Assembly: GCF_003918875.1 (NCBI RefSeq)
Contig: NW_025765214.1
Coordinates: forward strand, 1,860,001 to 1,924,000
Length of the DNA stretch: 64,000 nt
Reading direction: 5' to 3'
Source: Haliotis rubra
Taxonomy: Eukaryota
Part shown: positions 12,983-44,826 of the stretch, in pieces
Numbering within the stretch: the first letter of the stretch is position 1
Layout of the letters: every line of letters starts with the position of its first letter
Made by a program: the position numbers and the translations under genes
The notes under the pieces: model-generated
Database searches by the model: none
Told to the model about the DNA's origin: nothing
The model's input: only the letters and a program-made list of their open reading frames with translations

Positions 12983-13118
12983 GAATTTCTGTATTAGCTG
13001 GGGTCTACAAAGTCTCATCTCGTTGATGGTCTGCAGAATGCTGATGTTGAGGTCAATCTTCAATCTTTCCAAGATGGCCGACAGGACACAGAACAGTCCC
13101 GATCTATCCACACCATTC
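12983..13118 (-). CDS. RPTP D2 exon (P-loop WNGVDRSG)
   Basis: 136 nt; NGVDRSGLFCVLSAILERLKIDLNISILQTINEMRLCRPQLIQKF|gtgagt. Confidence 0.92.
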
Positions 13119-25100: not shown

Positions 25101-25276
25101 GAGATCATTGTGTTAAACTTACAATAATGTGATAGGTACCTGAAGTATTTTACACATCTTGAATGTCCTCATTGTGCAATGCACCAGGGCCTCTTCTGAT
25201 GAACACTCAATCTCTATATTGCCATGACGATCTGCCCCGGAACCATGCTCTGGCCAGTACCTCACACCCTTGCCCT

Positions 25277-25328
<52 letters not shown>

Positions 25329-28300: not shown

Positions 28301-31300
28301 TGTTCAGAGATGTACATTTTTCATTGAAAATTAATAAAGAGTGATTTTGGATGATAAATAGAATCTCACCCTCGTGTCTTCTGATATCAAATATATCAAC
28401 ACTCGTTGATAAAAGTAAAAATATCCTCGGCAAGCCTCGGATATTTGTAACTTTATCAACTCGTGTTGATATAATATCAGAAGACACTTGGGTGAGATTC
28501 TCTATATCCGATTCAAGGGAAGATACTCTTACATATAACATAGTCTATAAGACGTGACGTTTGTTTATAGTCTGCAATAACGTTACGAGTATGACAGGTA
28601 CATAAAGCGACAAAATGAATCAAGGCAACACATATCTGCAGCTGTTTTAAATCGATTATAAGGTCGTAGTCGTAGAGGTCCTCAAACATAGTTCACTTGT
28701 GTCCTCGGTTAATGGGTTCGCAATGTCTATCCTCAAAGTGAACTAAATTTGTAAAATACTCAGCCATGTCCCAGTCAGAGACTGAATTTTAGTATCCTAG
28801 ACTATTGGTTTGATAAACATATCAATTATCCCTGTAGTGCCTCCTTATTCCAGATGGTTAATTCTGACTCGGTCTCCGGTTAAGAAGCGGGACGCCATGT
28901 TTGCTTGCAAAGTCTGAAAGTAGTCCCTACTTGACCTTTCATATTTGCATCTTTATCTGCATATGAACCCAAACGAATACCGTTTTTATCCGTTGGCTTC
29001 ACCAGCTGAGAAACCTACACAATACATGATATTGACTTTTACTCACGTTGAACTGTTTCTGAAAACCGCCATGCTTTCTAAGCTGCTTGACATGGTACAG
29101 GAGAGTACTTGTCATCACCCTGGTTACCAAAGGAACGTTGTAGTATTCCCTGTCCGTGGTCTCATCTCCATCTCTGTGTGTGATTCCATCATGGTGTTCT
29201 GTTCTGTCATGTTCACCTCGTGCTGGTATCCAGGGAGAAACTATAGGAAGAAGGAGACTGACCTGAACACTACCACCATGATGGTTTCATATATTATGAA
29301 CAATGGCGGCAGCAGATATCCTATGAAGACTTTCAAACCTAAAGACAACATTTTCATAATTGTTTTCAAGGTATTCAATTTCTATCTTTAAGTTTATCAA
29401 TCTGTTTTCACAATTATATGAATTGTATTAAAACAAGAAAGAAGCTGAACTGGAAAGAGATATTATCAATATCTAATTCAATATTTGAAGCTGTGCACGC
29501 GTATATACAACCTTCTTGATAATCAGAAATGGTACCCGCACTAGGGTAACCAGATATCATCTCGTATCCGTCTTCATCCCTCTCAGAAGCTGTGACAAAC
29601 CGTCTCAATGTCCCTTTCATTTTTCTTTAACGTAGAACACAAAATAGATCATGCATTATTACCATCGCAAAAATACGTCCATTTGTTATGAATACACAAT
29701 GCTATTTAGAAAGTGGTCAAAGCACACAAAGTCAGCCGCCTAACTCGCTCAGCCACCGTGACTTAAACTTTGTGTGCTGGCGATTTGGTGCCTGACTCTA
29801 AGGGGGTGGGTTCGAATCCAGGATAGGACTCAACCCTAAACAGTACTAGAATTCGTACTTTACTAGGAAAGTGTAATCCCAAGTATGATATATGTTACAC
29901 GTCCATTTGTTGTAACACTGTAAGTATGTCGCCATTAGAAAGCATATAACCATATAAATTTCAAACAATTCTGAACAATGTTAGAATATACTTTTCTTTC
30001 ACCAATGTTCCTGTGTTTTCAGGGTTTTCATATGCAAACCCATGGTGTGTGTGTGTGTGTGGGGTGGTGGGGGTGGGGCTGGGGTGGTGGGGTTAGTGAT
30101 TAAAGCGTTCTCTCGTCACGCTGATTACCCGGGTTCGATTCCCCACATGAGTACAATCTGTGAAGCCCATTTCTGGTGTCCCCCGATATTGCAGGAATAT
30201 TGCTAAAAGTGGCGTAAGTCCATACTCAATCACTCATGTGAACACTTGACGTCACAAATATCATCTTCACTATTGGATAGTGATTCAAGAACACAGACTT
30301 TCCATAGTCAGAGTCGTACAATAGACTTTCATTTGTGAAAAAATGCCTTTGCTTCATGAGTTAACAATGCCGTACAGTATTCACCATCAATATATACATG
30401 TAATATCACAGAACCAATTCATTTAGTCATTACTGACAATTTCAAGTGTTGACAGACCTCAGCTTTTTCAGACTCAGAAAAACTGCCAATAATTCCAATC
30501 TTACAGTGGACATTGTTATTTTGAAGTCCTCAAAAGATACTTCACCTTTTGTAGACTAAGAAAGCTATAACGAGGAGGACTGCTACCAGCAAGATGGCCA
30601 CAACGGCCAGGATGATGGTCAGGGCATCTGGTCCAGCACTTTTTGGACCAGGTGATGGAGCGATTATCACTGAAACAGATGAAACTGAATTTTACCAACA
30701 TGTTCGATAACAGTGATTAAAATAATACTTCTAGAAATGTTTACTTACTACAACTGAGTTAATTATGTTTGTGGGGACAAAGCATGTTGGCAGAGAAAAT
30801 CTTATATTTACAGTTAATGCATGCATGGGTTCTTTACATACTATAAATCATTCATTGATATTAAAGTTATTGCTATGTTTACCATATTCAGTCCTAATCA
30901 TGGTATCATGATGTTAATACTCACTGAAAATCTCCAAACAATTTCATCTTAGGGACACTTTCACCGTTTTCCACACAATACAGCGTTACAACTTTGTGAA
31001 ATACAAATCCTAAGGACACGAAGGCTTTCGAATCTTGAGAGAGTGAGTGAGTGAGTGAGTGAGTGAGTTTAGTTTTACGCCGAACTCAGCAATATTTCAG
31101 CTATATGGCGGCGGTCTGTAAATAATCGAGTCTGGACCAGTGATCAACAGCATGAGTATCGATCTGCGGAATGGGAACCGATGACATGTGTCAACCAAGC
31201 CAGCGAGCCTGACCACCCGATCCCGTTAGTCGCATCTTACGACAAGCATGGGTTACTGAAGGTTCATACTAACCCGGACCTTCACGGGTGCATCTTGAGT

Positions 31301-34300
31301 GAGGGTCCAATGCTTTACATGCTAAAACACTGTTAGCAATTAAATATGTCCTGTTAAGTGAACATTAATATCGATCAGACAAATGTAAATGAATACCCAC
31401 TTCTGTCAGAGCAGAAGCTGCCTCCATAACCATCCGCACATCCCATAGAACAGTTGCCATGGATACTGTCACAGGATGGATTGCCTCTACAATAACCACA
31501 TGTCCCACTGCAGTTGTAGCCATAGCGACCATACGGACATGCTAGAAACAGATGAGACTGAGTAACAGAGGAGCAATGCTGATTATGATGTTGATCATCA
31601 TCACAACAACAACAGCAACAGCATCATCAACAACAATCGGCTATATTTCAGTTTCCAGGATATATTACGCCACTTTGATAAAGTATGTTCTTGGAAAGCT
31701 TCTTCCGGTTTCTTGCTAAACTATCTGTTTTCCCACTGAACCACCAGGGCGGTGATGAAACGGTGTTCAATCTAACATGTTAGACATCAGCTTTTATGAA
31801 TGCTGTACTTGATCTTTCTTGCCTGTTGTCATGAAATTTGTGTTATAAAATTGTACCGATTCAGCATTAGGCATCCCAAAGTTTTCTTATTCGTCATGGT
31901 ATTTCTTGCTTTTATAAGGTTATAAAGTTAGTTAGACCATATCACACATTACTCCATGCAAAATAGAGACCATAAACACACTTGAATGAAGATGTTAATG
32001 CCAGAGGGCTTGTCCCCAACCTCAAAGTTTTACATTTTCAACCATAACTGAAGGGTGAGTGGTTTGACAATGATATTACACTTGAAATCCTAAAACGATC
32101 TTTGGACAAAAACAACAGTTACAAACTATATTTGCAAACAAAGTGTATGTTATAATTACCTGTGTCACATGTGCCACCCATGAAGCCCTTCTCACAACCT
32201 TGCACACACAGCCCTGAGCTCTGGTCACAGTCTCCTTCATAACATCCATCTGAGCAGGTTTTGGTGCAGTGGGATCCATACCAGCCTTTCAGACAGCCTA
32301 AATTACAGGAACCATCAACCTGAATACACTGTCTGTCATTTGATTCTCTACAATTTAAACTACAGTTCCGGTCACAGAAGTTCCCATGTCTACCTTTCTG
32401 ACACCCATAGTTGCATCTTCCTGAGTTCTGCTCACAGATATGACCATTACATGTTTTACTGCAGTTTCGGTAACATAGGTCACCATAATGTCCAGCTGTG
32501 CACCCATCTAGACATCTGCCAGTATTCTGGTCACAATACACATAGTTGTCTATACCTTCACGTGGTTTACAGTCTGTGGGACACTTGTCATCACACTTGG
32601 AACCACGGAATCCTGGTAGACATCCTTCCACACAAACTCCTGATTTTTGCTTGCAGTTCCCCTCTGCACAGTTTGGACATTCTCTCCGACATCTGTCACC
32701 AAACCAGCTTGGTTTGCACTCAGTGCAGGTGGTTTCGGTACATGACTTGCAATTAGTTGGACATGCAGTTTTGCATTTCGGACCTTTCCAGCCATCCACA
32801 CATCCATTTGTACAGGTTCCATCTTTGTCGTTACAAGTCTGATCTCTACAGGTATTACTACAATTCTGATCACAACTGCTCCCATATACTGGTGTCACTA
32901 CAGCCATTGAGGCAAGCTCCATCTCTGAAGTTACAGAACTGATCCCCGGAGTCAAATGCCTTGCACCTGTACCCACAGGACGACTGACACTGGGGGCCAT
33001 AAAAACCAACTTGACATGATGTACACAATCCTGTGTCCTTCTGACAGCCATGTTCACACTTAGCTGGACAGATCTTTCTGCAATCATCGCCATGGAAACT
33101 CTCCTCGCACACAATACAGGAATCATCTGTGCAGTTATAGCAGTGATCTGGGCATTGCTTCTGACAGTAAGATCCCTTCTTCCCATCAACACACCCATCA
33201 GTACATTCAGGAGATCCAGTTGAGTCCATCACACAATGACTGTTGCTGCAGTTAGAACTACATTCCTTGGTGCAGTTAGTTCCATACCATGTGTCCTCGC
33301 AGTCACTGCAGAGTCCAGATGTCTGGTCACATACACTGTCCCTACAATGTGTATTACAGAGCTTGTCACACTTAGCACCATGATATCCTGGTTTACAGCC
33401 TCTTTCACAGTGTCCTGATGCTTGTTCACAGGAACCGTTAAAACAGTTGGCGCAAGATTTGGTACACTTGTCCCCATACCAGCCTAGCTTGCAACCGTCT
33501 TTACAACTCCCTTTTCTCTCACAGCCATTCAGACAGTTGTTGCAGGACTTACTACAAAACCGTCCATACCATCCAACAGAACAGGCCCTACATTTACCAC
33601 TACCTCTGTAGCAGGAACCCTCACAGTTAGGGCTACAGGCAGTGGTGCAGTCTTCTCCATGTTTTCCTGACACACAGTTGCTACAATAGCCAGTCTGATT
33701 ACATCGTTTCTTGTCACAAAACTCACTACAGCTATCAGTGCATGTGTTCCCATAGAAGCCACTTGTACATCCAGCTTGACAGACACCAGAACTGGTACAA
33801 TTTTTCTTTCTACACTTTGTGCACTGTTGGTCACACTTGGGGCCATACCATGTACTTTTACAACCAGACAGACATGTCTTGTCATCGGTACAGCTATGAA
33901 GATAGCAGTTCTCACAGATTATTTCTTTAACATCACATTTATCACCCACCCACATAGGTTCACATCCATCAAGACATTCTCCACTATCTATGTCACAAGT
34001 TTTGTCCATACAATGTTCTGAGCATCTCTTGAGGCATTTCCTACCATAGAGTCCATCTTTACACGCCTCACACTGTCCAGACCAGCGATTGCACATGACA
34101 CAGTTACTGTTGGGGCATCTCTGGCTACAGTTGAAGCCATAGTTACCATCTAGACAGGTCTGTGGACACTCAGTGGGCTTCTTGTCCTCACACTGGCCAT
34201 TGTTGTCACAGCGAGATACACAGGGCTTACACTCTGGACCATAGTAGCCATCACCACACGCTGTGTCTGGGGACGCACAAGATATATAAATGTAACTTGA

Positions 34301-35380
34301 CAATTCACATATAGCATCCACAAATAAAATAATCTAACACTACCTGCAGCACAATCAGCTTTTATATGCAGGGAGACCCATTTATGATCTGCTTGATTGG
34401 TATTTTAGAAGTTGATGAATAATAAGAAAGGTATGACAACATTTTATTATATTATGATGCTGAAATAATAAAGATCTTGTCATTCATAAAATGTCATACC
34501 TTTCCTATTAGACCCCTTTACTTTCATGGATTATTCATCCTTACTCAGAATATAACAATAAACGATAATTCTTGCCTCTTGCTCCACTTCATACTATAAC
34601 CATGATCTGTAACTAGTTCAAACAAAGATTTTTGCTCAATTCACTACTGGTTTGTGCACATTCAGGAAACACTTCTCACTCCAATGCCTTAACAGTGGGA
34701 GCACATTTCAATAACAGGATGTGAGTTTTGTAATCTAGCTTAATGACGGGGATGCCTTGATGCCTTGGATGATTGGCCCATAGGTGTCCCCCCAATGAAA
34801 TCACAGAGACAAATAGTTCTGCTGAGGGCACATACATATACTGGACAAAATAAGTTAGGGATATTGGTATTTTTATGATTTATATTTTATCAGTGTGTCA
34901 ATGAATAAATCATTATTCAGAATTTCAAAAGTACATATATCCCTAATTATTTTTGTCTAGTATAGATATGTGTGGACATATAACATATCCATAAATGATG
35001 TAGCCAAGTACAACAAAACCATCTGCTTTCAATATTCATTCCAGGACATTGATTTTTTGCTGAGAAACACCCCAAACATATACAGTATATAATATTAGGA
35101 ATAGATCTATCGCTGAAAAGTTAGAACCTCTGACATTATTGCAGGGCAAATGTAAAAGTAACAACACCTACATAATCGTGATTCATGGCTATTGTGGCAG
35201 TAAATGTATGAATACAAAGTAACTGGAACACAACAGGAATACATACACATGAAGGTATTACCAGAATATAGATAGGAATGTAAATTACTGCCCCTGTATG
35301 ATGAGAACAGAATATCACCATGGTTACAATGGTGACATTGGTAACATAACAGCTATGTCAGGTTGAAAGTTTGCAGGTAA

Positions 35381-35441
<61 letters not shown>

Positions 35442-38400
35442 GTTCTCTAGGTCTATGGGTGTACCAAAAATGTGTTTTGCAAATACAAGATGTAGCATTT
35501 TCTTACATTTTGTGACAATGCGAGCTGAAGTCTTTGACACTGGATGGCACTGTTTGTACACCAAGATCTGATTTTCTATGACTCTAGTAAAAGTGATCTC
35601 CCAGTATAGTTTAGCTGCCACACTTTTGAATATGAAAAATGACAAAAATCGCTTCTGTGCTCACAACATTTCAATCGATCACTTATGAATGAATTTGTGT
35701 GTAAATTAAATGATACAAAACCTAATGAAACATATATGTTTCACCAACACATGTAATATTCGGGATTACACTTTCACAGTAGTGTATAGATTCTAGTACT
35801 TTTGTTGAGTTGAGTACCATCTGGGATTCAAGCCCACACCCTTAGAGCAAGGCATCTAATAGCGAGCACACAAAGTCAGCCATCTAACCCACTCAGCCAG
35901 CGCGGCTTCATGTTGCCATATAGCATGTGTTACACTTCACCACTTTCTATTTGACATTGTGTATTCATGTCAAAGTATATTGAATTTTTATCACTTGAAA
36001 AACGTATTACTGTATACTCCTGTGCTGGTAATGATCTATATAGACATAAAGCCATAATATTTCTGATGATGGATGATCGACTGCACACAGTCTTGTTTTC
36101 ATTGTGATAGTGAACATTTTCCCAGAAAGGTGTTAATGGTAAGTAACCAGGGCTGACTTACCTGACTCGCAGATCTTGCAAGTCTTCTTACAGTGGATGT
36201 ATGCATTGCTTGATGCACTGAGAGGGTAGCTGCAGATTGTCCTTGCGTTGTCTCCACAATAACTCACCCAGTTAGCTGTATCCTCACATGGACTGACAGC
36301 CAATACTGAAACAGCAGTCATAGTAACAGAAACCTATTAGAGATAGGCAGGCATCTATGTAAGACTGCTTGATGTTGATGTAATATAGTTACTTGAACAG
36401 GGTCCGCGAGTTTCATTTACTGCACAGTAGCATGTATCAATGATGCGATTTGACGAAACAGCAAAATGTTTGGGCTGAAATATGGAAACTTTCCCTTTGT
36501 TTTGGCATTTTCATAACACTTGTGTAATAAAGGTTGATAAAAATATCATTTAGGAAAACATGGTGCATTCTACCAGCGCGAATACAGATTCTGAGAGGTA
36601 ATGATCGGGTCAGAACAAACACAATCAGTTAATCATAAGCTGACATATCAGCAGGTATGCATACATTATGCAACGAAATGGAAAGAAAAGTTTCTCGACA
36701 GATGATGTTGCTCGAGAAATATGCGTGCCTTGCAGAAGTATGTTTGCACTGAAGGGTCTATGATAAATAATGTTTACAAAATCGTCACACTTTCAGACGA
36801 AACGTGATATAGTTAATCATTATCCACATCCTTTAACATAATACCAAAGTATAACACTATCTGCGAAATCGGTGTATGCAAGTGTTGGGGCCAAAAAGTT
36901 CCGAGTCCCGTGCTGGGATTCGAACCACGGACCTTCAACTCCGAAGTCGGACGCCTTGTCCACATGAACAATGAGGTTAACCCTGTCAGCAAGCTGACAA
37001 GGTAAGGATGTCATCTGTGGGATGACTATATTATATGTAAATAATCGAGTCTGGACCAGACAATCCAGTGATCAACAGCATGAGCATCGATTTGCGCAAT
37101 TGGGAACCGATGACATGTGTCAACCAAGTCAGCGAGCCTGACCACCCGATCCCGTTAGTCGCCTCTTACGACAAGCATGGGTTACTGAAGGTACATTCTA
37201 GCCCGGACCTTCACGGTACGATTACAAGGAAGAACTTTAACCGATGCAACGAAGATAATACCAGATGCTGTTGCAAAAGGCAAACGCAGGTATGAGAGTG
37301 TACCGACTCAATTAGCCACTAAGCTGTCACCCATCCCCNNNNNNNNNNNNNNNNNNNNNNNNNNNNNNNNNNNNNNNNNNNNNNNNNNNNNNNNNNNNNN
37401 NNNNNNNNNNNNNNNNNNNNNNNNNNNNNNNNNNNNNNNNNNNNNNNNNNNNNNNNNNNNNNNNNNNNNNNNNNNNNNNNNNNNNNNNNNNNNNNNNNNN
37501 NNNNNNNNNNNNNNNNNNNNNNNNNNNNNNNNNNNNNNNNNNNNNNNNNNNNNNNNNNNNNNNNNNNNNNNNNNNNNNNNNNNNNNNNNNGCGGTGGAGT
37601 GGGGTGGAGCGGAGTGGAGTGGGGTGGAACGGAGTGGAGTGCAGTGTCTAGTAGTGTAGTGTGGTGTAGTGTGGTGTAGTGTAGTGTAGCGTAGTGTAGT
37701 GTAGTGTAGTGTAGTGTAGTGTAGTGTAGTGTAGTGTAGTGTAGTGACTTGTAGTGTAGATAGATAGATATTCGTTATTTCCTCCACTTGAATGAAGATT
37801 ACAATATGCATTGATAATGTATACAGTATATTTACGTCAAATGATTAAGATGGATTTGTGATATAGTCAAGAATGTTCATAGACATACAAGTATTTCAGC
37901 AAGTATCGCCATTTCCTTATGAAATGGCTTACATTAATTATTACTTTCTACTTTCTACTTCCATGATACATTCTTTTGGACAAACACCAAATAAAAATGC
38001 AAGCATAACATCATCTACATAACAAGTTTCTACATCCAGAATGCTGTGTGGTTTAGTCAGGTATTTTGTTGTGTAGCGTAGTGTTTTGTTGTGTGGTCTT
38101 GTAAGGAACTGAAGGATGAGTGTAGTGTAGTGTAGTGTAGTGTAGTGTAGTGCAGTGTTGTGTAGTGTAGTGTAGTGTAGTGTAGTGAGGTGTAGTGTAG
38201 TGAGGTCTANNNNNNNNNNNNNNNNNNNNNNNNNNNNNNNNNNNNNNNNNNNNNNNNNNNNNNNNNNNNNNNNNNNNNNNNNNNNNNNNNNNNNNNNNNN
38301 NNNNNNNNNNNNNNNNNNNNNNNNNNNNNNNNNNNNNNNNNNNNNNNNNNNNNNNNNNNNNNNNNNNGTAGTTAGGAGTAGTGTAGTGTAGTGTAGTGTG

Positions 38401-41400
38401 GTGTACTGTAGTGTAGTGAGGGTGTAGTGTAGTGTAGTGTAGTGTAGTGTAGTGTAGTGAGGTGTAGTGTAGTGTAGTGAGGTGTAGTGTAGTGTAGTTT
38501 GGACAAACACCAAATAAAAATGCAAGCATAACATCATCTACATAACAAGTTTCTACATTCAGAATGCTGAGTGGTGTAGTGAGGTATTTTGTAGTGTAGT
38601 GTCTTGTTTGGTTGTGTAGCGTAGTGTTGTGTTGTGTAGTGTAGTGTTTTGTTGTGTGGTCTTGTAAGGAACTGAAGGATGAGTGTAGTGTAGTGTAGTG
38701 TAGTGTAGTGTTTTGTTGTGTAGTTTAGTGTTTTGTTGTGCAGTGTAGTATTGTGTAGTGTAAAGTACTGTTTTGTTGTGTGGTCTTGTAAGGAACTGAA
38801 GGATGAGTGTAGTGTAGTGTAGTGTAGTGTAGTGCAGTGTTGTGTAGTGTAGTGAGGTGTAGTGTAGTGAGGCGTAGTGTAGTGTCATGAGGTGTAGTGT
38901 AGTGTAGTATAGTGTAGTGTAGTGTAGTGTAGTGCAGTGTCCTGTATGAGTGTAGTGTAGTGTGGTGTAGTGTGGTGTAGTGTAGTGAGGTGTAGTGTAG
39001 TGTAGTGTAGTGAGGGGTTTTGTTGTGCAGTGTAGTATTGTGTAGTGTAGCGTAGTGTTTTGTTGTGTGGTCTTGTAANNNNNNNNNNNNNNNNNNNNNN
39101 NNNNNNNNNNNNNNNNNNNNNNNNNNNNNNNNNNNNNNNNNNNNNNNNNNNNNNNNNNNNNNNNNNNNNNNNNNNNNNNNNNNNNNNNNNNNNNNNNNNN
39201 NNNNNNNNNNNNNNNNNNNNNNNNNNNNNNNNNNNNNNNNNNNNNNNNNNNNNNNNNNNNNNNNNNNNNNNNNNNNNNNNNNNNNNNNNNNNNNNNNNNN
39301 NNNNNNNNNNNNNNNNNNNNNNNNNNNNNNNNNNNNNNNNNNNNNNNNNNNNNNNNNNNNNNNNNNNNNNNNNNNNNNNNNNNNNNNNNNNNNNNNNNNN
39401 NNNNNNNNNNNNNNNNNNNNNNNNNNNNNNNNNNNNNNNNNNNNNNNNNNNNNNNNNNNNNNNNNNNNNNNNNNNNNNNNNNNNNNNNNNNNNNNNNNNN
39501 NNNNNNNNNNNNNNNNNNNNNNNNNNNNNNNNNNNNNNNNNNNNNNNNNNNNNNNNNNNNNNNNNNNNNNNNNNNNNNNNNNNNNNNNNNNNNNNNNNNN
39601 NNNNNNNNNNNNNNNNNNNNNNNNNNNNNNNNNNNNNNNNNNNNNNNNNNNNNNNNNNNNNNNNNNNNNNNNNNNNNNNNNNNNNNNNNNNNNNNNNNNN
39701 NNNNNNNNNNNNNNNNNNNNNNNNNNNNNNNNNNNNNNNNNNNNNNNNNNNNNNNNNNNNNNNNNNNNNNNNNNNNNNNNNNNNNNNNNNNNNNNNNNNN
39801 NNNNNNNNNNNNNNNNNNNNNNNNNNNNNNNNNNNNNNNNNNNNNNNNNNNNNNNNNNNNNNNNNNNNNNNNNNNNNNNNNNNNNNNNNNNNNNNNNNNN
39901 NNNNNNNNNNNNNNNNNNTGTAGTGTGTGANNNNNNNNNNNNNNNNNNNNNNNNNNNNNNNNNNNNNNNNNNNNNNNNNNNNNNNNNNNNNNNNNNNNNN
40001 NNNNNNNNNNNNNNNNNNNNNNNNNNNNNNNNNNNNNNNNNNNNNNNNNNNNNNNNNNNNNNNNNNNNNNNNNNNNNNNNNNNNNNNNNNNNNNNNNNNG
40101 TGTAGTGTAGTGTAAGGTAGTGAGGTGTAGTGTAGTGTAGTGTAAGTGTAGTGTAGTGTAGTGTATTGTAGTGTAGTGTGTGTAGTGTAGTGTCTTTATA
40201 GTGTAGTGTAGTGTGAGTGTAGTGTAGTGTAGTGTAGTGTGAGTAGTGTAGTGTAGTGTAGTGAGTGTAGTGTAGTGTAGTGAGTGTAGTGTAGTGTGAG
40301 TGAGGTGTAGTGTGTAGTGTGAGTGTAGTGTAGTGTAGTGTAGTGTGAGTAGTAGTGTAGTGTAGTGTAGTGTAGTGTGGTGTAGAGTGTAGTGTAGTGT
40401 AGTGTCCTGTAGTGTAGTGTAGTGTAGTGTGTAGTGTAGTGTAGTGTCTTGTANNNNNNNNNNNNNNNNNNNNNNNNNNNNNNNNNNNNNNNNNNNNNNN
40501 NNNNNNNNNNNNNNNNNNNNNNNNNNNNNNNNNNNNNNNNNNNNNNNNNNNNNNNNNNNNNNNNNNNNNNNNNNNNNNNNNNNNNNNNNNNNNNNNNNNN
40601 NNNNNNNNNNNNNNNNNNNTGTAGTGTCTTGTAGTGTAGTGTAGTGTAGGATTACACACTCACGCTAACTGCTAGATTTGTAACCCTGATACACATACTT
40701 TAAATGAACAGTATACATTCATTGATACGTTGATACAGTGATTTATCAAGCTAAATATGCAATGAATACTTGTGCTGGTCAAAACGCCTTTATGCACATT
40801 AGATCTTACTCCATCCAACTATACGGACACACGCGCAAGCACACGCACTGAAGAACGCAGGCACACGTACGTGCAAGGTATGTTTTCATTGAAGAATAAC
40901 TCTCTCGCTCCTATTTCCAGGTATGGGTTTTGTGAGTATGTTTTAGCAAGCCGATTGGCCAAACATCATTTACATCATTTTATATGTAGCATAGTTACAG
41001 CGGCGGATTTATATATTGGAACAGCGGCGGTTGAGCTTTTGTGTGGTGTGAACCAATGGTGTGGTGTGGTGTGTGGTGTGGTGTGGTGTGGTGTGTGGTG
41101 TGGTGTGGTGTGAGAAAGGAGGGTGTTGTGTGGTGGTGTTGTGTGTGGTGTTGTGGTGTTGTGTGGTGTTGTGTTGTTGTGTGTGGTGTGTGTGGTGTGG
41201 TGGTGTGGTGTGGTGTGTGGTGTGGTGTGGTAATATTCACCCGTTATCCCGAGTGTTTCAATGGCCATTTGATAAACTTTAAACACACACACACACGCAC
41301 AGACAGACAGACAGACAGACAGAACCCCAACAACAAAACACACATACACAAAACACAACACAACCACACACACAATCACAACACAACCAAAAGTCAAAAA

Positions 41401-44068
41401 AGACACAAGGGCGTTTTATTGTCTCAACCACACACACAAAAAATACATAAATACACTGGTTGAGAATATACCGATTAGTAGATACAATGGAAAAGATGTG
41501 GATAACATCAGGAGGACGTTTTAGAGTAAGGTATATCTGAAATCCCATTCAACAAGTTATTTCTTAGGTCCATTCCATGTTTTACAAAGAGAGATAATCT
41601 AAATATTACATCGGCATCATTCGATGGCAAAATACAAACAAACCCTATTCTCCTCAACTTAGATGAGAAAGGTTCTGGTATATATTTAGTTCGTATTTCT
41701 GCACAATAAGGACATTCAAAGGTAAAATGTATTTCGTCTTCTATAGCAGAGTTACATAATGGACAAATTCTTTGTATTCTTTCAAGTGATATATTCCGTC
41801 CATAATTAATCATTAGTTTTGACAAGCCAAGTCTGTATTTAATATATATATTTCTTAAGTTACTATTTGTTCAAAACTAATAAAATATTTCTCCGGACTC
41901 TAATAAAGTTTTAAACGTTTTGTACAGATTATAACGTGAACTGTTTTCTAAGTTGGATTGCCAACCTTGATAGAACATATTTATTGCTACTTTATGAAAA
42001 TCATTTAGAAATAGATATAGATCGTAAACAGATTGATTAAACCATACAAACCCATATCCATGTGAGAATAATAGTGTCCTTATATGCGATACCCAAGTAA
42101 CCTTACCGATACTATCAAGATGAAAGAGCATGTTATACGTTATTTTCGGGCTGAGTCGATGATATTTAAACCAATATTTTAAACACTTTATTTGCGAATT
42201 AATGTAAATTCTCCCAAACACCCCCTTTTGTGTCGTCAACTAAACATGATTTCAGGAATAAATTCATTTTGTCTGCAGGAATAAATTCTTTCTCTTCCTA
42301 AGGAATCTATTGCAGGAGGTGTTTGAAGCTGATTATTCACTAGTGATGGCATATTGAGTGTGCATCATCTGACATATCCCTCTTACGTCAGGTCCATCGC
42401 TCTAATGATTCGTCATTCCTTTACGAATACATGAATATACTGTAAAATACCAATCAATATACGAATGTATCGTACAGATCGGCAAATTACATTCTGCTGT
42501 GTAAGCCTGATAGGTTTGTTGATGATTGATGGCAATATATTGGAGCATGTGTTTCTTTCCCTACATCTCATGAATGAAATTGTATATGCAATTCAAGAAA
42601 TGAAAACAATTTATTCCATTAATCAAATCCAAACTCATATAATGTTCATGAATTCTGAGTTGCGTTTTTATTGCTGGTCAGTATATGTCCAATATAGAAG
42701 CTTATTAGTGGTTATCAAGTTCTATATATTGCGTCGGCAATATTGCCATATAGGTGAGTTATCTTTCATATATTTCCAAGGATTGTTGCTTTCATTTACA
42801 TTAACTGAATAGATATGTGATGAATATGCATTTGCCGAAAAATACATTAATGATCAAAACGTGACTTGTAAATATTATTTCACTAGGGGTTGAGATAATT
42901 ATTATTATAAAAACACAACTTAAAAACACCCAGTGTATTTCATATGAGGATACTATAATTAGTAAACATGTGAATATCACTCACATCTATACCACTCACA
43001 CACAATCCAGTTGGGGGCGGTGGGGTAGCCTAGTGGTTAAAGCGTTGGCTCGTCACGCCGAAGACCCGGGTTCGAATCCCCACATTGGTACTATGTGTGA
43101 AGCCCTTTTGAGTTGCCGTGATGTTGCTGGAATATTGCTAAAAGCGGCGTAAAACCAAACTCAGAGTGGTAACACCCTAGTGTATATTGTCTGAGGTATT
43201 TCAATCAGGAGTTGATTTGATATTCTACAATAATCAGGGTGAGTTGATCCTACGGGAATTCATTCAGAAGGAAGGGTTTGATCCTGAGAGGAGAGTGACT
43301 TCATCCTAGGATAATTTCACTCTAGAGTGTATCAGGTCATTCCTTGTTGATTTTATCCTGGACAGGGTCACAGGAGAATGAAATTTAGGGGAGTTATTTC
43401 ATCCTAGGATAATTTCACTCTAAAGAACCAGTGACGATCCAGGTTAGATGTGGTTTTCAGTGAACCATGTTTGTTGTAAGAGGCGACTAATGGGATCGGG
43501 TGGTCAGGCTCGCTGACTTGGTTGACATATGTCATCGTATCCCAACTGCTTAGAACGATGGTCATGAGGTTGATCACTGGATTGTCTGGCCCAGACTCGA
43601 TAATTTACAGACCGCCGCCATATAGCTGGAATATTGCTGAGCGGCGTAAGACTCAACTCACTCACTCAGTCTAAAGAGTACCAGGTCATACCGTTGTGAT
43701 TCTGTCCTGATCACATGAGAATGACATTTAGTGGGGGTGATTTCCCTGCCACACGGGTCATTATTAAGTAAGTCAAAAGTTAAAACAGACAAGGAAGTAT
43801 ATATCTGGTTTCCGGCGACATTATGGTTACCAAAGTTGAAAATTCGACAGAAGATGATACACCTAGATAGTATAATAGCATCTACGTACATACAAATATC
43901 ATACATGTAGATGAAAGAATAGCCAACGTTGATAGAAGTATGTTCTACGTACATGATAACCCTTTCAGACTGTAATACTAATACGCTTCTAGGGAGTGGC
44001 GACCGGATCTTACCTTGTTTATCTAGCATCAAGAACAATGCCGCGAACAGCATCCACAGTTGGTCCAT
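12983..44068 (-). CDS. Receptor-type protein tyrosine phosphatase gene (signal peptide - ShKT - multiple EGF/laminin-EGF-like repeats - TM - PTP D1 - PTP D2), multi-exon, ~1,500 aa; last exon not securely found
   Basis: 21 exons in order on the minus strand; GT-AG boundaries and phases are consistent except two lesions (a +1 frameshift near 32890 and a garbled exon at 25589-25711). PTP motifs appear twice in order: D1 KNIY, DYINAS, ASQGP, DFW, YWP, WPDRG, VHCSDGVGRTG, VQTLEQY; D2 KNRF, DYINAV, TQTP, DFWRM, YWP, WPQG, VHCWNGVDRSG. Confidence 0.9.
14227..14381 (-). CDS. RPTP D2 exon (WPQ loop to VHC)
   Basis: 155 nt; TLQPRNIKLFQCHCWPQGQTTPVSSLPLLAMMEAVEVWREATGFKPVTVHC. Confidence 0.92.
14797..14947 (+). 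mobile_element. SINE family D (tRNA head with long variable arm)
   Basis: Related copies at 29722-29883, 35760-35910 (-) and 55120-55251 (-) share the AAAGTACTAGAATC...AAAGTGTAATCCCA tail. Confidence 0.75.
15404..15575 (+). mobile_element. SINE family A inserted in exon-array copy 8
   Basis: 11-bp TSD CAGTCCTGGGG (15393-15403 and 15576-15586). Confidence 0.93.
16532..16669 (-). CDS. RPTP D2 exon (YYWP), first copy of the tandem array
   Basis: 138 nt, phase 0-0; the only copy with a pyrimidine-rich acceptor (ctctgttccag). Confidence 0.88.
17366..17500 (-). CDS. RPTP D2 exon (TQTP...DFWRM)
   Basis: 135 nt; GYRSPMDFLLTQTPLTDTVLDFWRMVIQTDSQTIVMLNDDNDDAM. Confidence 0.93.
17591..17722 (+). mobile_element. 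SINE family A, diverged
   Basis: Head/B box and tail match other copies. Confidence 0.75.
18210..20645 (+). mobile_element. Long-TIR (~250 bp) IS630/Tc1/mariner-like element hosting the nested Tc1; truncated transposase N-terminus at 20056-20345
   Basis: 18210-18462 is the reverse complement of 20388-20645, with TA on both sides; internal MKAYSDDAKRLIRNVLNFF*KE...RTTFALG...KGRHPKLDSFDIRVIR resembles an HTH-type transposase N-terminus. Confidence 0.85.
18542..20044 (+). mobile_element. Second Tc1-family (DD34E-type) transposon, frameshifted
   Basis: TIRs TACTAG..CATAAAGAAACTGTGCAT, TA TSD. Transposase pieces 18839-19045, 19048-19605 and 19544-19843 carry MPRL..., GRPRVT, VFTDES, QQDNA, SPIEHVW. 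Confidence 0.95.
21070..21143 (-). CDS. RPTP D2 exon (DYINAV)
   Basis: CDSHRPVLSSTLDGTDYINAVYLP|gtaggt. Confidence 0.92.
21979..22290 (-). mobile_element. 312-bp internal-deletion derivative (MITE-like) of the Tc1 at 11450-12956
   Basis: Same TIRs, TA TSD; ~60 bp of one end joined directly to ~250 bp of the other. Confidence 0.93.
22598..22697 (-). CDS. RPTP D2 exon (KNRF)
   Basis: NLQLMKPPYRLRDYRTALLPENASKNRFMDILA; phase 0-1. Confidence 0.9.
23001..23150 (-). CDS. RPTP D1/D2 linker exon
   Basis: 150 nt; EQYEFLHNALIEALMAGGTTVSTSDFKTSYDNLLQDNPETGVSRLKEQFE. Confidence 0.93.
23540..23783 (+). mobile_element. SINE-like family B
   Basis: Near full-length match to the family B consensus. Confidence 0.9.
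24033..24168 (-). CDS. RPTP D1 exon (P-loop and Q-loop)
   Basis: 136 nt; SDGVGRTGTFLALWNLIDEAKTSDTVDPYSCIKRMRHERVNMVQTL. Confidence 0.95.
24834..24994 (-). CDS. RPTP D1 exon (WPD loop to VHC)
   Basis: RIVKHFQFAFWPDRGIPTDVASLVEFYFKVRNTPTHGQGPMVVHCS; phase 0-2. Confidence 0.95.
25140..25274 (-). CDS. RPTP D1 exon (YWP)
   Basis: 135 nt, phase 0-0; GKGVRYWPEHGSGADRHGNIEIECSSEEALVHCTMRTFKMCKILQ; acceptor abuts a (GAT)n tract. Confidence 0.75.
25277..25330. repeat. (CAT)n microsatellite abutting a PTP exon acceptor
   Basis: Direct reading. Confidence 0.95.
25589..25711 (-). CDS. RPTP D1 exon (GP...DFW...), 3' half garbled
   Basis: GPMNRTVGDFWLMIFQLRTS then an in-frame TGA; fragments of the expected KIVMLTNxxEGG are interleaved with short duplicated sequence. 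Confidence 0.7.
25802..25838 (-). CDS. RPTP D1 37-nt exon (FVASQG)
   Basis: GVDAPNKFVASQG; cag acceptor, gtaatt donor. Confidence 0.88.
25866..26120. mobile_element. Penelope-like inverted-repeat element with minimal hammerhead-like core
   Basis: Inverted arms 25897-25981 and 26040-26118; CTGATGA-AGGAGC aagaatta GCTCT-GAAACGTC at 26040-26073. Confidence 0.6.
26931..27007 (-). CDS. RPTP D1 exon (DYINAS)
   Basis: 77 nt; YDQTRVVLELNEDHSPSDYINASFVS|gtgagt. Confidence 0.92.
27578..27665 (-). CDS. RPTP D1 exon (KNRY-equivalent KNIY)
   Basis: 88 nt; KLPSGLLHDCYAAMEKENRLKNIYNDVFA|gtaagt. Confidence 0.88.
29047..29240 (-). CDS. RPTP exon 7, juxtamembrane/wedge
   Basis: Pyrimidine tract plus tag acceptor; ...TDREYYNVPLVTRVMTSTLLYHVKQLRKHGGFQKQFN|gtgagt. 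Confidence 0.85.
29512..29624 (-). CDS. RPTP exon 6, juxtamembrane
   Basis: Phase 2-1; KMKGTLRRFVTASERDEDGYEMISGYPSAGTISDYQE. Confidence 0.75.
30082..30236 (+). mobile_element. SINE family A
   Basis: B box GGTTCGATTCCCC and GAAGCCCATTTCTGGTGTCCCCC core. Confidence 0.85.
30546..30669 (-). CDS. RPTP exon 5, transmembrane helix
   Basis: ...GPDALTIILAVVAILLVAVLLVIAFLVYKR; ttcag acceptor, gtgaag donor. Confidence 0.9.
31042..31289 (-). mobile_element. SINE-like family B
   Basis: Near full-length; ATCTTGAG repeated on both flanks. Confidence 0.9.
31401..31541 (-). CDS. RPTP exon 4, EGF-like repeat
   Basis: 141 nt, phase 1-1: ACPYGRYGYNCSGTCGYCRGNPSCDSIHGNCSMGCADGYGGSFCSDR. Confidence 0.9.
32160..34260 (-). 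CDS. RPTP exon 3, large EGF/laminin-EGF-like repeat exon (MEGF10/SCARF-like), with one frameshift
   Basis: ORFs 32870-34321 and 32119-33198 overlap; repeated CxxGxxGxxC units. The exon is 2101 nt (3n+1), consistent with one extra base near 32890. Confidence 0.9.
34849..34962. mobile_element. Small Tc1/mariner-type MITE
   Basis: TACTGGACAAAATAAGTTAGGGATAT ... ATATCCCTAATTATTTTTGTCTAGTA, flanked by TA. Confidence 0.75.
35386..35440. repeat. (GT)n microsatellite
   Basis: Direct reading. Confidence 0.95.
36162..36305 (-). CDS. RPTP exon 2, ShKT-like domain
   Basis: 144 nt, phase 1-1; VLAVSPCEDTANWVSYCGDNARTICSYPLSASSNAYIHCKKTCKICES has six Cys with the C-x-D start and CKKTCxxC end typical of ShKT. 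Confidence 0.8.
36903..36975 (-). pseudogene. tRNA-Arg(TCG)-like degenerate sequence (tRNA pseudogene or SINE head)
   Basis: TGGACAAGGCGTCCGACTTCGGAGTTGAAGGTCCGTGGTTCGAATCCCAGC; anticodon loop and T loop present, acceptor stem does not pair. Confidence 0.55.
37591..40650. repeat. (GTAGT)n satellite with interspersed duplicated blocks and assembly gaps
   Basis: Long GTAGT runs; the block TTGGACAAACACCAAATAAAAATGC occurs near 37976 and 38499. Confidence 0.95.
41040..41230. repeat. (GTGTG/TGG)n simple repeat
   Basis: Direct reading. Confidence 0.9.
41508..42239 (-). mobile_element. LINE ORF2 3' fragment with CCHC zinc knuckle
   Basis: KLMINYGR...RICPLCNSAIEDEIHFTFECPY..IRTKY, preceded by a degraded ORF2 C-terminal region; clade uncertain (RTE-X/Proto2-like motif). 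Confidence 0.75.
43013..43163 (+). mobile_element. SINE family A
   Basis: Matches the family consensus. Confidence 0.85.
44014..44068 (-). CDS. RPTP exon 1, signal peptide (MDQLWMLFAALFLMLDKQ)
   Basis: ATG at 44068, hydrophobic core, donor AG|gtaaga; phase 1 joins in frame to the ShKT exon. Confidence 0.7.
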
Positions 44069-44461
44069 TGGTAATCGAAGTGATCAATATGATCCTATAC
44101 CTGTAGGGAGATTGCACGCGGTGATGGTGCACTGAAATACCAACACAGGAAGCGAACACCCGAAAGTGATCACGTCATCCGAAAGGAAACGTTCGTTCAG
44201 TTTCGGTTCTGTTAGTCATACCTTTGAAAAGTCTAATGTTTAACCCATGCACTGAACTCATGAGCCCTATTTCTCTATTGTTCTTTATATAAGAGGCGAA
44301 GGCGGTAGCGTAGTAGTTCGCTAATCGAACCGAGGTCCTGGGTTCGATTCCTTAGGTTCCTTATGTGCGAAAGCCATGTCTGGTGTCACTCACGATGATG
44401 CTCTCGCGATGTTTCGTCACTTGCAAGCTAGTTGAGTGTATCACCTGGTGTACAGTATAAT

Positions 44462-44826
44462 AGTGAATGAGCGAGTGAATGAGTTTAAGTTTACGCCGCA
44501 TTTAGCAATGTTGCACCAATATCACGGCGGGGTACAAAAGAAATGGGGCTTCACAGATTATATCCGTGTGGGGAATCGAACCCGGGTGTTCGACTTGACA
44601 AGCGAACGCTTTAACCACTAGGCTACCCCACTGCCGTACAAAGGTATAATAACATTAATACTTTGAGTGAGTGAGTTGGGTTTTACGCCGCTTTTTGCAA
44701 TATTCCAGCAATATCACGGCGGGGAGACCAGAAATGGGCTTCACACATTGTGCCCATGTTGGGAATCGAACCTGGGTCTTCGGCGTGACGAGCGAATGCT
44801 TTAACCACTAGGCTACCGCACCGCCC
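44462..44826 (-). mobile_element. Two adjacent SINE family A copies (44462-44635, 44665-44826)
   Basis: Match the consensus; second copy flanked by ACATTAA(T/C)ACTTTGA. Confidence 0.85.

What the first reader, a model, noticed from the sequence alone, without database searches (positions are those of the whole stretch)
29047..44068. Unusual receptor architecture: ShKT domain capping a long EGF-repeat stalk on a tandem-domain phosphatase
Seen: signal peptide, a single ShKT-like exon, ~750 aa of MEGF10/SCARF-type repeats, a TM helix, juxtamembrane tyrosine motifs (GYEMI; EYYNV, a YxN Grb2-type site) and D1/D2. All ectodomain exons are phase 1-1, the pattern of exon shuffling. Known: vertebrate RPTP ectodomains use Ig/FN3/MAM/CA modules; EGF-rich RPTP-like genes are expanded in molluscs; MEGF10/CED-1/SCARF repeats act in engulfment and scavenging. 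Inference: a lineage-specific recognition receptor with a swappable N-terminal module, possibly immune.
Basis: partly seen in the sequence, partly recalled or inferred. Interest (0 to 1): 0.7.

Follow-up and report, generated by a model that had tools for sequence, protein, structure and literature searches.

The report
Abalone EGF-stalk tyrosine phosphatase, ShKT-like cap
This stretch of abalone DNA carries a real, expressed gene for a cell-surface tyrosine phosphatase whose long EGF-repeat stalk is tipped by a small six-cysteine, toxin-like (ShKT-like) module. The design is unusual by vertebrate standards, but it is already predicted in three other abalones and belongs to a mollusc receptor family described in 2025.

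Summary
On the minus strand lie:
- a signal-peptide exon (44068-44014);
- a 144-nt six-cysteine exon (36305-36162);
- one giant EGF exon (34266-32160, not 34260) and a 141-nt EGF exon;
- a transmembrane exon, two juxtamembrane exons with the YEMI and YYNV motifs, then D1/D2.

All N gaps sit in intron 1, not in coding sequence.

Probable RNA contigs cover the cap exon and the TM exon exactly. Both carry unplaced flanks, so both are spliced.

RefSeq models from Haliotis rufescens, H. cracherodii and H. asinina have the same SP-cap-EGF-TM-D1-D2 order and the same cap-to-EGF junction.

The ShKT label is weak. ShK is the only Pfam hit (E=1.8). The only two PDB profile hits are ShK-type peptides. 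Ten EGF control pieces give no ShK hit.

The architecture is not unique:
- a tandem paralogue lies 46 kb downstream;
- at least 11 clearer ShKT-cap plus EGF exon pairs occur elsewhere in this genome, and at least four are followed by phosphatase exons.

MEGF-type receptor phosphatases with a galactose-binding cap are published for Biomphalaria (PMC12297450). An immune role is untested here.

As assembled, this copy has an extra base at about 32891, which read contigs contradict. It also has an unchecked in-frame stop in D1.

Other windows of this scan noted related abalone EGF-receptor clusters.

The parts
44014..44068 (-). Exon 1: start codon and signal peptide (18 codons + 1 nt, ends in phase 1)
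   Evidence: ATG preceded by an in-frame stop; donor AAG|GTAAGA. Homologous to the first exon of H. rufescens P0001 and H. asinina P0164, with exon and donor conserved in DNA. The junction to 36305 is inferred from the orthologues. The RNA contig's two extra bases (AG) at 36306-36307 are compatible but not proof.
36306..44013 (-). Intron 1 (7.7 kb), holding all five N gaps (37339-37590, 38210-38367, 39079-39918, 39931-40099, 40454-40619)
   Evidence: Gaps listed. They are flanked by (GTGTA)n-type 5-nt satellite arrays. The H. rufescens intron is 5.4 kb with no exon between. Gaps were not filled.
36162..36305 (-). Exon 2: single-exon six-cysteine ShKT-like cap (48 codons, phase 1-1; C-x9-C-x7-C-x13-C-x3-C-x2-C)
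   Evidence: Splice sites. Probable RNA contig X6 record 23 covers exactly 36162-36307 with 16 and 17 unplaced bases on either side. Pfam: ShK is the only hit, E=1.8, 9.6 bits, profile 1-37/37. The PDB profile hits only 7l2g (ShTK domain protein) and 2md0 (AcK1), at E 0.5 and 0.83. In the ESM Atlas, 23 of 30 hits are ShK, score 0.90. All six Cys are conserved in four abalone species.
32160..34266 (-). Exon 3: giant EGF-repeat exon (702 codons once the extra base near 32891 is discounted; phase 1-1)
   Evidence: Acceptor CCCCAG| and donor ACAG|GTAATT. Probable RNA contigs cover 32169-34266. Contigs of DNA runs X1 and X2 lack one base at 32891. The H. rufescens orthologous exon is one 702-codon frame. 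Pfam EGF_TEN 42.7 bits, below the cut-off of 65.
31401..31541 (-). Exon 4: last EGF-like repeat (141 nt, phase 1-1)
   Evidence: Splice sites. 89% identical to H. rufescens residues 773-819.
30546..30669 (-). Exon 5: transmembrane helix (phase 1 to 2)
   Evidence: Probable RNA contig X8 record 24 aligns exactly to 30546-30669, with 27 and 84 unplaced flanking bases. Hydrophobic run of about 24 residues followed by YKR.
29047..29625 (-). Exons 6 and 7 (29625-29512 and 29240-29047): juxtamembrane region with the GYEMI and EYYNV motifs
   Evidence: Splice sites; alignment to P0001. YYNV is conserved in H. rufescens and H. cracherodii, and appears as YYNL in the copy-B-type protein. The YEMI tyrosine is Cys in H. 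cracherodii.
22977..27665 (-). D1 phosphatase exons (outside the finding's span): KNIY, WPD, HC|SDGVGRTG split by an intron, QTL|EQYEF
   Evidence: Pfam Y_phosphatase hits on exons; exon map against P0001.
25641..25652 (-). Lesion in a D1 exon as assembled: 27 nt missing (the KIVMLT...EEGR strand) and an in-frame TGA just before the donor
   Evidence: Three-way DNA alignment with H. rufescens and with tandem copy B, both of which are intact. Not verified by reads.
12983..22700 (-). D2 exons, including a 152-nt x 10.9 tandem array of one D2 exon (14978-16672). D2 has WPQ instead of WPD and HCWNGVDR.

Best explanation
The finding is the 5' two-thirds of a real abalone (Haliotis) gene for a type I membrane receptor tyrosine phosphatase of the mollusc MEGF-type family. 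Its parts, in order, are:
- a signal peptide;
- a 48-residue six-cysteine cap with a ShKT-like cysteine framework, encoded by one phase 1-1 exon;
- about 22 six-Cys EGF-like repeats (one 2.1-kb exon plus one small exon), forming a stiff, glycosylated stalk;
- one TM helix;
- a juxtamembrane segment with a conserved YYN(V/L) motif;
- a D1 domain with catalytic-type motifs;
- a D2 domain that lacks the general-acid Asp and is probably regulatory.

Shown here: exon structure, splicing of the cap and TM exons in transcripts, conservation of the whole architecture in three other abalones, and purifying selection on the stalk and phosphatase exons.

Inferred from what is known of receptor phosphatases: ligand or cell-surface binding at the tip or stalk changes clustering or dimerisation. 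This alters the access of D1 to phosphotyrosine substrates. The phosphorylated YYN motif could recruit an SH2 adaptor.

The gene arose by exon shuffling of a small disulfide-rich module onto an EGF-phosphatase chassis that, in other molluscs, carries a galactose-binding cap or none. It now sits as one of a tandem pair whose cap and EGF exons are kept about 96-97% identical.
For: Gene model and splice sites.

Transcription and splicing:
- The probable RNA runs X6 and X8 cover exons only.
- One contig matches the cap exon exactly (36162-36307) and one matches the TM exon exactly (30546-30669). Both have unplaced flanks.
- One contig runs from inside the EGF exon to 34266 plus 62 further bases. 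X8's depth in the bin that holds the 3' end of the cap exon corresponds to about 53 bases at that contig's depth. This is my arithmetic on the depth table, not a reported joint.

Orthologues:
- H. rufescens XP_048255595.1 (1530 aa, named 'cell death abnormality protein 1-like'), H. cracherodii and H. asinina proteins have the same order of parts and the same junctions.
- The H. rufescens locus has the same exon layout.

Selection:
- dN/dS against H. rufescens is 0.23-0.32 for the EGF exons, 0.13-0.48 for the phosphatase exons and 0.80 for the cap, which has only 45 codons.
- Our lineage has fewer unique substitutions in the phosphatase exons (16) than H. asinina has (31).

Cytoplasmic part: closest to PTPRS, PTPRA/E and LAR tandem domains, E about 1e-116 to 1e-102.

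Cap:
- ShK is the only Pfam, PDB-profile and Atlas signal.
- Ten 47-aa EGF control pieces give no ShK hit.

Family context:
- Other members carry F5/8C caps or canonical ShK caps.
- A tandem paralogue exists.
- Published MEGF/GBD receptor phosphatases: PMC12297450.
Against: - ShKT membership is below threshold: 9.6 bits against a cut-off of 20.9.
- hhalign of this cap family against the canonical ShK caps of the same genome gives only 16.5% probability, over the last 15 columns.
- The AlphaFold model is unusable (pLDDT 57).
- As assembled, the window copy is not an intact reading frame: an extra base at about 32891, an in-frame stop in D1 at 25643-25641, and a 10.9-copy array of a 152-nt D2 exon.
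- The RNA and DNA contigs mix letters of copies A and B, and their depth is 2-4 times that of the flanks. Expression therefore cannot be assigned to this copy rather than its neighbour. The 'missing base' evidence could in principle come from copy B.
- The junction from exon 1 to the cap is not directly shown in this genome.
- No ligand, substrate, tissue or immune evidence was obtained.
Confidence: 0.75

Rival explanations
1. The N-terminal module is not a ShKT domain. It is an abalone-specific six-cysteine knot of another or unclassified fold, or a degenerate piece of the EGF repeat system, that merely shares the terminal C-x3-C-x2-C spacing.
For: - Pfam ShK scores 9.6 bits, E=1.8, far below the gathering score.
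- The PDB profile E-values are 0.5 and 0.83.
- hhalign against canonical ShK caps of the same genome gives 16.5% probability, over the C-terminal 15 columns only.
- MAFFT aligns canonical C1 to this cap's second Cys.
- The same loose cysteine regex also fires inside EGF repeats.
- The first two loops are longer than in the canonical caps.
Against: - Every weak signal points to ShK and to nothing else: Pfam full-length 1-37/37, the only two PDB hits, and 23 of 30 Atlas hits.
- Ten EGF control segments never hit ShK.
- The cap lacks the G-aromatic-x-G signature of the stalk repeats.
- It occupies the same position (a single exon between signal peptide and EGF stalk) as clear ShK caps in sister genes.
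Confidence: 0.35
2. The window copy is a broken gene (pseudogene or null allele). The intact, expressed gene seen in the read contigs is the neighbouring copy or another allele.
For: - Frameshift at about 32891 in the giant exon.
- 27-nt loss with an in-frame TGA in a D1 exon that is intact in copy B and in H. rufescens.
- 10.9 tandem copies of a 152-nt D2 exon.
- The cap-word search listed no protein encoded by this window. It returned only three proteins, from three other abalone species.
- RNA contigs carry copy-B letters at 36262 and 36264 and at many EGF positions.
Against: - Read contigs lack the extra base at 32891 and show none of copy B's ten indels. The assembly is therefore error-prone here, and an intact A-like exon exists.
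- dN/dS is 0.13-0.17 on D1 exons downstream of the lesion.
- Our lineage has fewer unique changes in the phosphatase exons than H. asinina. Any inactivation is therefore very recent, or an artefact.
Confidence: 0.2
3. The cap exon is an optional (cassette or alternative-first-exon-linked) exon. The main product may be an EGF-phosphatase without it.
For: - It is a symmetric phase 1-1 exon of 144 nt, so it can be skipped without changing the frame.
- Two alternative signal-peptide exon types occur in H. rufescens and H. cracherodii models and in the tandem copy here.
Against: - All seven listed abalone proteins of this group include the cap.
- All six cysteines are conserved across four species.
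Confidence: 0.1

Closest known systems
MEGF/GBD receptor-like tyrosine phosphatases of Biomphalaria sudanica (SudRes1 locus; PMC12297450, Nat Commun 2025)
   Same: Single-pass receptor with an extracellular multiple-EGF stalk and intracellular tandem PTP domains. Paralogues are clustered. The family is mollusc-specific, and an N-terminal non-EGF module caps the stalk. In my D1 tree, bivalve members with the F5/8C (galactose-binding) cap are relatives of this gene.
   Different: No resistance or immune association is known for it. No Biomphalaria protein was identified among the hits I checked, so direct kinship to those genes is inferred from the shared architecture.
Haliotis rufescens XP_048255595.1 'cell death abnormality protein 1-like', with its H. 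cracherodii and H. asinina counterparts
   Same: Same order of parts, same exon junctions, same cap with all six Cys. Exon-by-exon identity is about 73-90% in the structured domains and lower (55-63%) in the juxtamembrane exons.
   Different: These are automatic predictions with misleading names and no published study. The window copy carries assembly-level lesions that they lack.
Vertebrate tandem-domain receptor phosphatases (PTPRS/LAR type R2A, PTPRA/PTPRE type R4)
   Same: D1-D2 cytoplasmic region, E about 1e-116 to 1e-102 against solved structures. D1 has WPD, HCX5R and Q-loop motifs. D2 lacks the general acid.
   Different: Vertebrate ectodomains use Ig, FN3, MAM or carbonic-anhydrase modules, or are very short (established knowledge). 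None has an EGF stalk or a ShKT module.
MEGF10 / CED-1 / Draper / SCARF1 engulfment and scavenger receptors
   Same: Long run of six-Cys EGF-like repeats of about 33 aa on a single-pass receptor. RefSeq names relatives after them.
   Different: No EMI domain at the N-terminus. No NPxY motif in this copy. The tail is a tandem phosphatase instead of a short tyrosine-motif tail. This is resemblance of the stalk only.
ShKT (ShK toxin-like, PF01549) domains: ShK/BgK toxins, AcK1, MMP23, CRISP C-terminal domain
   Same: Six cysteines ending C-x3-C-x2-C with KTC, and C-x-D at the start. ShK is the only family recalled by three independent weak searches.
   Different: Scores are below threshold and the first loops are longer. 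It is tethered to a receptor stalk rather than secreted or attached to a protease. No evidence of channel binding.

Membership tests
Classical receptor-type protein tyrosine phosphatase (tandem D1-D2) | Signal peptide and a single transmembrane helix | tested here: met
   Exon 1 has a hydrophobic core. The TM exon 30669-30546 carries a hydrophobic run of about 24 residues and is confirmed as an exon by an RNA contig.
Classical receptor-type protein tyrosine phosphatase (tandem D1-D2) | D1 with the PTP signature HCX5R, WPD loop, Q loop and pTyr-recognition loop | tested here: inconclusive
   HCSDGVGR (split by an intron), WPD and QTL-EQYEF are present, and KNIY replaces KNRY. However, the exon coding the KIVMLT strand is truncated with an in-frame TGA as assembled, and this was not checked by reads.
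Classical receptor-type protein tyrosine phosphatase (tandem D1-D2) | Second PTP-like domain (D2) | tested here: met
   D2 exons lie at 22700-12983, with WPQ and HCWNGVDR. The orthologue hits Pfam Y_phosphatase twice.
ShKT / ShK domain-like (PF01549) | Six cysteines with terminal C-x3-C-x2-C spacing in about 35-50 residues | tested here: met
   C-x9-C-x7-C-x13-C-x3-C-x2-C, conserved in four abalone species.
ShKT / ShK domain-like (PF01549) | Score at or above Pfam's gathering threshold (20.9 bits) | tested here: not met
   9.6 bits, E=1.8. Orthologue N-termini give no hit at E<=5. Sister-family caps in the same genome reach 14.8-20.8 bits.
ShKT / ShK domain-like (PF01549) | ShK fold and C1-C6, C2-C4, C3-C5 disulfides | tested here: inconclusive
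   AlphaFold2 on a 9-sequence alignment gave pLDDT 57, so no fold search was run. Disulfides are not testable with these tools.
MEGF10 / CED-1 / Draper / SCARF engulfment receptors | N-terminal EMI domain | tested here: not met
   No EMI hit in Pfam scans of the cap exon or of the orthologues' N-termini.
MEGF10 / CED-1 / Draper / SCARF engulfment receptors | Short cytoplasmic tail with NPxY / YxxL motifs | tested here: not met
   The tail is a tandem phosphatase. There is no NPxY in the copy-A-type orthologues P0001 and P0152, and none is visible in the window's own juxtamembrane exons as printed. The copy-B-type protein P0163 does have NPSY and NPYY.
Mollusc MEGF-type receptor phosphatases (as in PMC12297450) | Extracellular multiple-EGF stalk plus intracellular tandem PTP on one single-pass protein | tested here: met
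   Relatives occur in at least 10 bivalve and 3 gastropod genera.
Mollusc MEGF-type receptor phosphatases (as in PMC12297450) | Galactose-binding (F5/8 type C-like) N-terminal domain | tested here: not met
   No F5_F8_type_C hit here. It is present in bivalve relatives P0015, P0059, P0135 and P0021.

The most novel reading that the evidence does not exclude
ShKT-capped EGF-stalk receptors may form an abalone-specific, tandemly expanding recognition-receptor system in which the small ShKT-like tip is the fast-evolving ligand-contact element. The system would include this tandem pair and the 11 or more clearer ShK-capped genes elsewhere in the genome, some with phosphatase tails and some with short tyrosine-motif tails. 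The same ectodomain would then be wired to opposing signalling tails, as in paired immune receptors.

Hints:
- The cap's dN/dS is 0.8 against 0.2-0.3 for the stalk.
- The cap has 6 of 45 lineage-specific substitutions against about 5% in the stalk.
- H. asinina P0044 and P0165 share an identical cap and first 262 residues but have a phosphatase tail and a short tail respectively.
Probability: 0.15. Interest if true: 0.6.

Novelty: new variant of a known kind. Interest (0 to 1): 0.35.

Why it matters
Receptor tyrosine phosphatases are usually discussed with the vertebrate set of ectodomains. Molluscs built a separate, expanded set on an EGF stalk. One branch of that set (with a galactose-binding cap) has just been linked genetically to schistosome resistance in snails.

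A second, unpublished cap type exists in abalones: a toxin-like six-cysteine module encoded by one shuffle-ready exon. It is conserved across four species and is expressed. This widens that family and gives a concrete, small, expressible domain with which to fish for ligands in a commercially farmed animal with serious disease problems.

It does not change any general principle, and the proteins already sit, misnamed, in RefSeq.

Tried and rejected
1. AlphaFold2 of the 47-residue cap with a 9-sequence alignment gave pLDDT 57, pTM 0.34. This was too poor for a fold search, so none was run. A merged alignment with canonical caps misaligned the cysteines, and no second model was made.
2. Profile-profile comparison of this cap family with the canonical ShK caps of the same genome gave only 16.5% probability. 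Common origin of the two cap types is therefore not shown.
3. The word search for transcript-derived protein fragments covering the D1 lesion (P0001:1020-1165) found no candidates.
4. The word search with the canonical H. asinina cap found only two proteins. The database distribution of ShK + EGF + PTP outside Haliotis and Gigantopelta could not be counted.
5. The EGF stalk found no solved structure by sequence at E<=1e-5.
6. Literature searches for ShKT + phosphatase + EGF, and for oyster or mollusc EGF receptor phosphatases, gave nothing on this cap. Only PMC12297450 is relevant.
7. A CED-1/MEGF10 orthologue was considered and rejected (no EMI domain, phosphatase tail). A chance ORF or intronic cysteine-rich artefact was also rejected (spliced in RNA, conserved in four species).
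8. The joined, spliced protein model was not sent to any search or folding tool. All searches were exon by exon, by reference, or used the orthologue's protein id. A local concatenation with X at exon junctions was used only inside a script for a three-way alignment.
Full report
**What is there**

The window comes from a 1.38-Gb, 2855-contig assembly.

A gene runs on the minus strand from 44068 to about 12980. Reading the splice sites directly, the 5' part consists of:
- exon 1, 44068-44014: ATG and a hydrophobic signal sequence, donor AAG|GTAAGA, ending in phase 1;
- exon 2, 36305-36162: 144 nt;
- exon 3, 34266-32160;
- exon 4, 31541-31401: 141 nt;
- exon 5, 30669-30546: the transmembrane helix;
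- exons 6 and 7, 29625-29512 and 29240-29047: the juxtamembrane region with the GYEMI and EYYNV motifs.

D1 follows at 27665-22977 and D2 at 22700-12983. Pfam recognises Y_phosphatase on the D1 exons. The stalk holds 136 cysteines in about 750 residues, which is roughly 22 six-Cys repeats of about 33 residues, with 12 N-glycosylation sequons.

**The gaps**

All five runs of N (37339-40619) lie inside intron 1. They are bordered by 5-nt satellite arrays of the (GTGTA)n kind. In H. rufescens the same intron is 5.4 kb and holds no exon. The orthologous proteins pass from the signal-peptide exon to the cap without extra residues. The gaps therefore do not touch the reading frame. I filled nothing.

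*1. The EGF exon starts at 34266, not 34260.* There are two AG acceptors 6 nt apart. A probable RNA contig (X8 record 31) aligns up to 34266. The H. rufescens protein reads ...CES|DTAC..., which needs the upstream acceptor, and that acceptor is conserved.

*2. The giant exon is split into two frames in the window by one base near 32891*.
- Contigs of two DNA runs from two organism labels lack that base.
- Without it the exon is 702 codons, exactly as in H. rufescens.
- Caveat: these contigs have 2-4 times the depth of the flanks and carry a mosaic of letters from this copy and its tandem neighbour. They merge the two copies.
- Even so, they show none of the neighbour's ten other indels. The simplest reading is that these single-base indels are assembly errors.

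**Is the cap exon really part of the transcript?**

Two small runs (about 50 million letters each, listed as 'RNA?') cover the exons and not the introns, apart from dispersed repeats.
- One contig matches 36162-36307, with 16 and 17 further bases that lie elsewhere. The exon is therefore spliced at both of the predicted sites.
- Another contig matches the TM exon exactly, also with foreign flanks.
- The contig that reaches 34266 continues for 62 bases. In that run, the depth in the bin holding the 3' end of the cap exon equals about 53 bases at that contig's depth. This fits a 36162>34266 joint, but it is my arithmetic on the depth table, not a listed joint.
- The 44014>36305 joint is not shown directly. 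It is supported by homology of exon 1 to the first exon of the H. rufescens and H. asinina models, and by conservation of exon and donor.
Expression cannot be assigned to one of the two copies.

**Relatives**

A search of 1.8 billion representative proteins with the first 464 residues of the giant exon gave one outstanding hit (E=1e-281). It is H. rufescens XP_048255595.1, 1530 aa, named 'cell death abnormality protein 1-like'. It has the same signal peptide, cap, stalk, TM, YEMI/YYNV, D1 and D2.

The cap itself recalls only three protein clusters in 5.8 billion: H. rufescens, H. cracherodii and H. asinina. The H. rufescens locus has the same exon layout.

Many further hits are EGF-stalk phosphatases:
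- bivalves: Pinctada, Mizuhopecten, Argopecten, Tegillarca, Solemya, Crassostrea, Mytilus, Mactra, Mercenaria;
- gastropods: Physella, Gigantopelta, Haliotis.

Their N-terminal modules differ. Several bivalve members have an F5/8-type-C (galactose-binding) domain. H. asinina P0044 has a canonical ShK domain (E=0.004). Gigantopelta P0041 has a short ShK-like motif. Others have none.

On a tree of D1 domains the galactose-binding members form one clade. The ShK-type members all fall in the gastropod part, unresolved among themselves. The tree needs only a few changes of cap type. Rows left out were isoforms and cluster mates, and models without a complete D1. Labels were assigned by regular expression and mislabel at least P0164 and P0055.

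**The same design elsewhere in this genome**

The cap exon occurs twice. The second copy (98% protein identity) lies 46 kb downstream on the same strand. It heads a second gene with its own signal-peptide exon of another type, EGF, TM, D1 and D2.
- Cap and EGF exons are 96-97% identical in DNA between the two copies.
- Their phosphatase exons are mostly only 50-79% identical in protein.
- This pattern suggests gene conversion of the ectodomain exons.

Searching the genome with the H. asinina canonical cap found at least 11 further ShK-type exons, each about 1 kb upstream of an EGF exon, on four other contigs.
- Nine of the ten scanned hit Pfam ShK at E = 6e-4 to 0.045.
- At least four are followed on the same strand by phosphatase exons.
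- Earlier notes of this scan describe abalone EGF-receptor clusters whose members end either in a phosphatase or in a short tyrosine-motif tail.
- In line with this, H. asinina P0044 (phosphatase tail) and P0165 (short tail) share an identical cap and first 262 residues.

**Is the cap a ShKT domain?**

For:
- It has six cysteines with the spacing x9, x7, x13, x3, x2, a C-E-D start and a KTC-x-x-C end. All are conserved in four species.
- ShK is the only Pfam family recalled, over the full profile (E=1.8).
- A profile of the cap hits only two solved chains, both ShK-type (7l2g and 2md0; E 0.5 and 0.83).
- 23 of 30 language-model neighbours are ShK clusters (score 0.90).
- Ten 47-residue control pieces of the stalk never recall ShK.

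Against:
- All scores are below threshold.
- The orthologues' N-termini give no Pfam hit.
- hhalign against the canonical caps of the same genome gives 16.5% probability.
- The structure model is unusable.

I put the ShKT fold at about 0.6-0.65. 'ShKT-like' is the right wording.

**State of this copy**

Besides the extra base at about 32891, one D1 exon (starting at 25711) lacks 27 nt relative to both H. rufescens and copy B. It reads ...LRTS-MQN-stop just before the conserved donor (TGA at 25643-25641). The lost piece codes the conserved KIVMLT...EEGR strand. I could not check this with reads, because the single call was already used.

Two indirect tests argue that any inactivation is very recent or an artefact:
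- dN/dS on D1 exons downstream of the lesion is 0.13-0.17.
- With H. rufescens as outgroup, our lineage has 16 unique amino-acid changes in the phosphatase exons against 31 in H. asinina.

One D2 exon is present as a 152-nt x 10.9 tandem array. This was already noted by the scan.

**How it probably works**

The cytoplasmic part is a standard tandem receptor phosphatase, closest to PTPRS, PTPRA/E and LAR.
- D1 has WPD, HCSDGVGR and the Q loop.
- D2 has WPQ and a Gly-to-Asp change in the P loop, so it is probably regulatory.

By analogy with other receptor phosphatases (established knowledge, also as discussed in PMC12297450), binding at the ectodomain would alter clustering or dimerisation and thus D1's access to substrates. 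The conserved YYN(V/L) motif fits the pY-x-N preference of Grb2-type SH2 domains. That is inference.

The cap evolves faster than the stalk (dN/dS 0.8 on 45 codons; 6 lineage-specific changes), which is compatible with a ligand-contact tip. The numbers are small. An immune role is an analogy only.

**Novelty**

The EGF-stalk receptor phosphatase family of molluscs is published with a galactose-binding cap (PMC12297450). The ShKT-like cap is not in the literature I could search, but it is present in RefSeq predictions. I rate it a new variant of a known kind, of moderate interest.

Noticed in passing
window 25641-25711 (minus strand): A D1 exon lacks 27 nt that code the conserved KIVMLT...EEGR strand, and it ends in an in-frame TGA just before the conserved donor. 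The exon is intact in tandem copy B and in H. rufescens. This is either an assembly error or a very recent null allele.
   Followed up: partly
G000:C324:1815000-1850300 (10-45 kb before the window start; loci L003-L007, L002): A tandem paralogue with the same cap-EGF-TM-D1-D2 layout and a different signal-peptide exon type about 400 nt upstream of its cap. Its EGF exon is 97.3% identical in DNA to the window's but carries ten single-base indels. Its phosphatase exons are much more divergent. The pattern suggests gene conversion of the ectodomain exons plus assembly indel errors, or a decaying copy.
   Followed up: partly
window 14978-16672: A 152-nt unit containing one D2 exon is repeated 10.9 times in tandem. 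152 is not a multiple of 3, so including more than one copy would shift the frame. Already noted by the scan as s1-352115.
   Followed up: partly
G000 contigs C622, C2531, C2076, C402 (loci L008-L022): At least 11 single-exon canonical ShK caps lie about 1 kb upstream of large EGF exons, in tandem clusters. Nine of the ten scanned hit Pfam ShK at E = 6e-4 to 0.045, and at least four are followed by phosphatase exons on the same strand.
   Followed up: partly
proteins P0044 and P0165 (Haliotis asinina): Two proteins share an identical signal peptide, ShK cap and first 262 residues, then diverge. One has a phosphatase tail (991 aa). The other has a TM helix plus a short tail with YETI and YEAL motifs (580 aa). 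This is the same outer part on two tail types.
   Followed up: partly
window 23248-23440: The acceptor region and first 10-15 codons of the D1 exon that begins EQYEFL occur three times within about 300 nt (near 23430, at 23277-23248 and at 23150). These partial exon-start duplications lie inside the preceding intron.
   Followed up: no
protein P0163 (H. cracherodii, copy-B type): The copy-B-type orthologue has NPSY and NPYYNL motifs in its juxtamembrane region, plus canonical KNRY and HCSAGIGRTG. The copy-A type has AYYNV, KNIY and HCSDGVGRTG. The two tandem genes share ectodomains but differ in their signalling parts.
   Followed up: no
window 15490, 17664, 30100-30233, 44440-44810, 54455, 63016 and others: A short dispersed repeat, whose translation reads ...[26 protein letters not shown], recurs on both strands in introns and between genes. 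It accounts for depth spikes of thousands-fold or more in the read contigs. Probably a SINE-like element.
   Followed up: no
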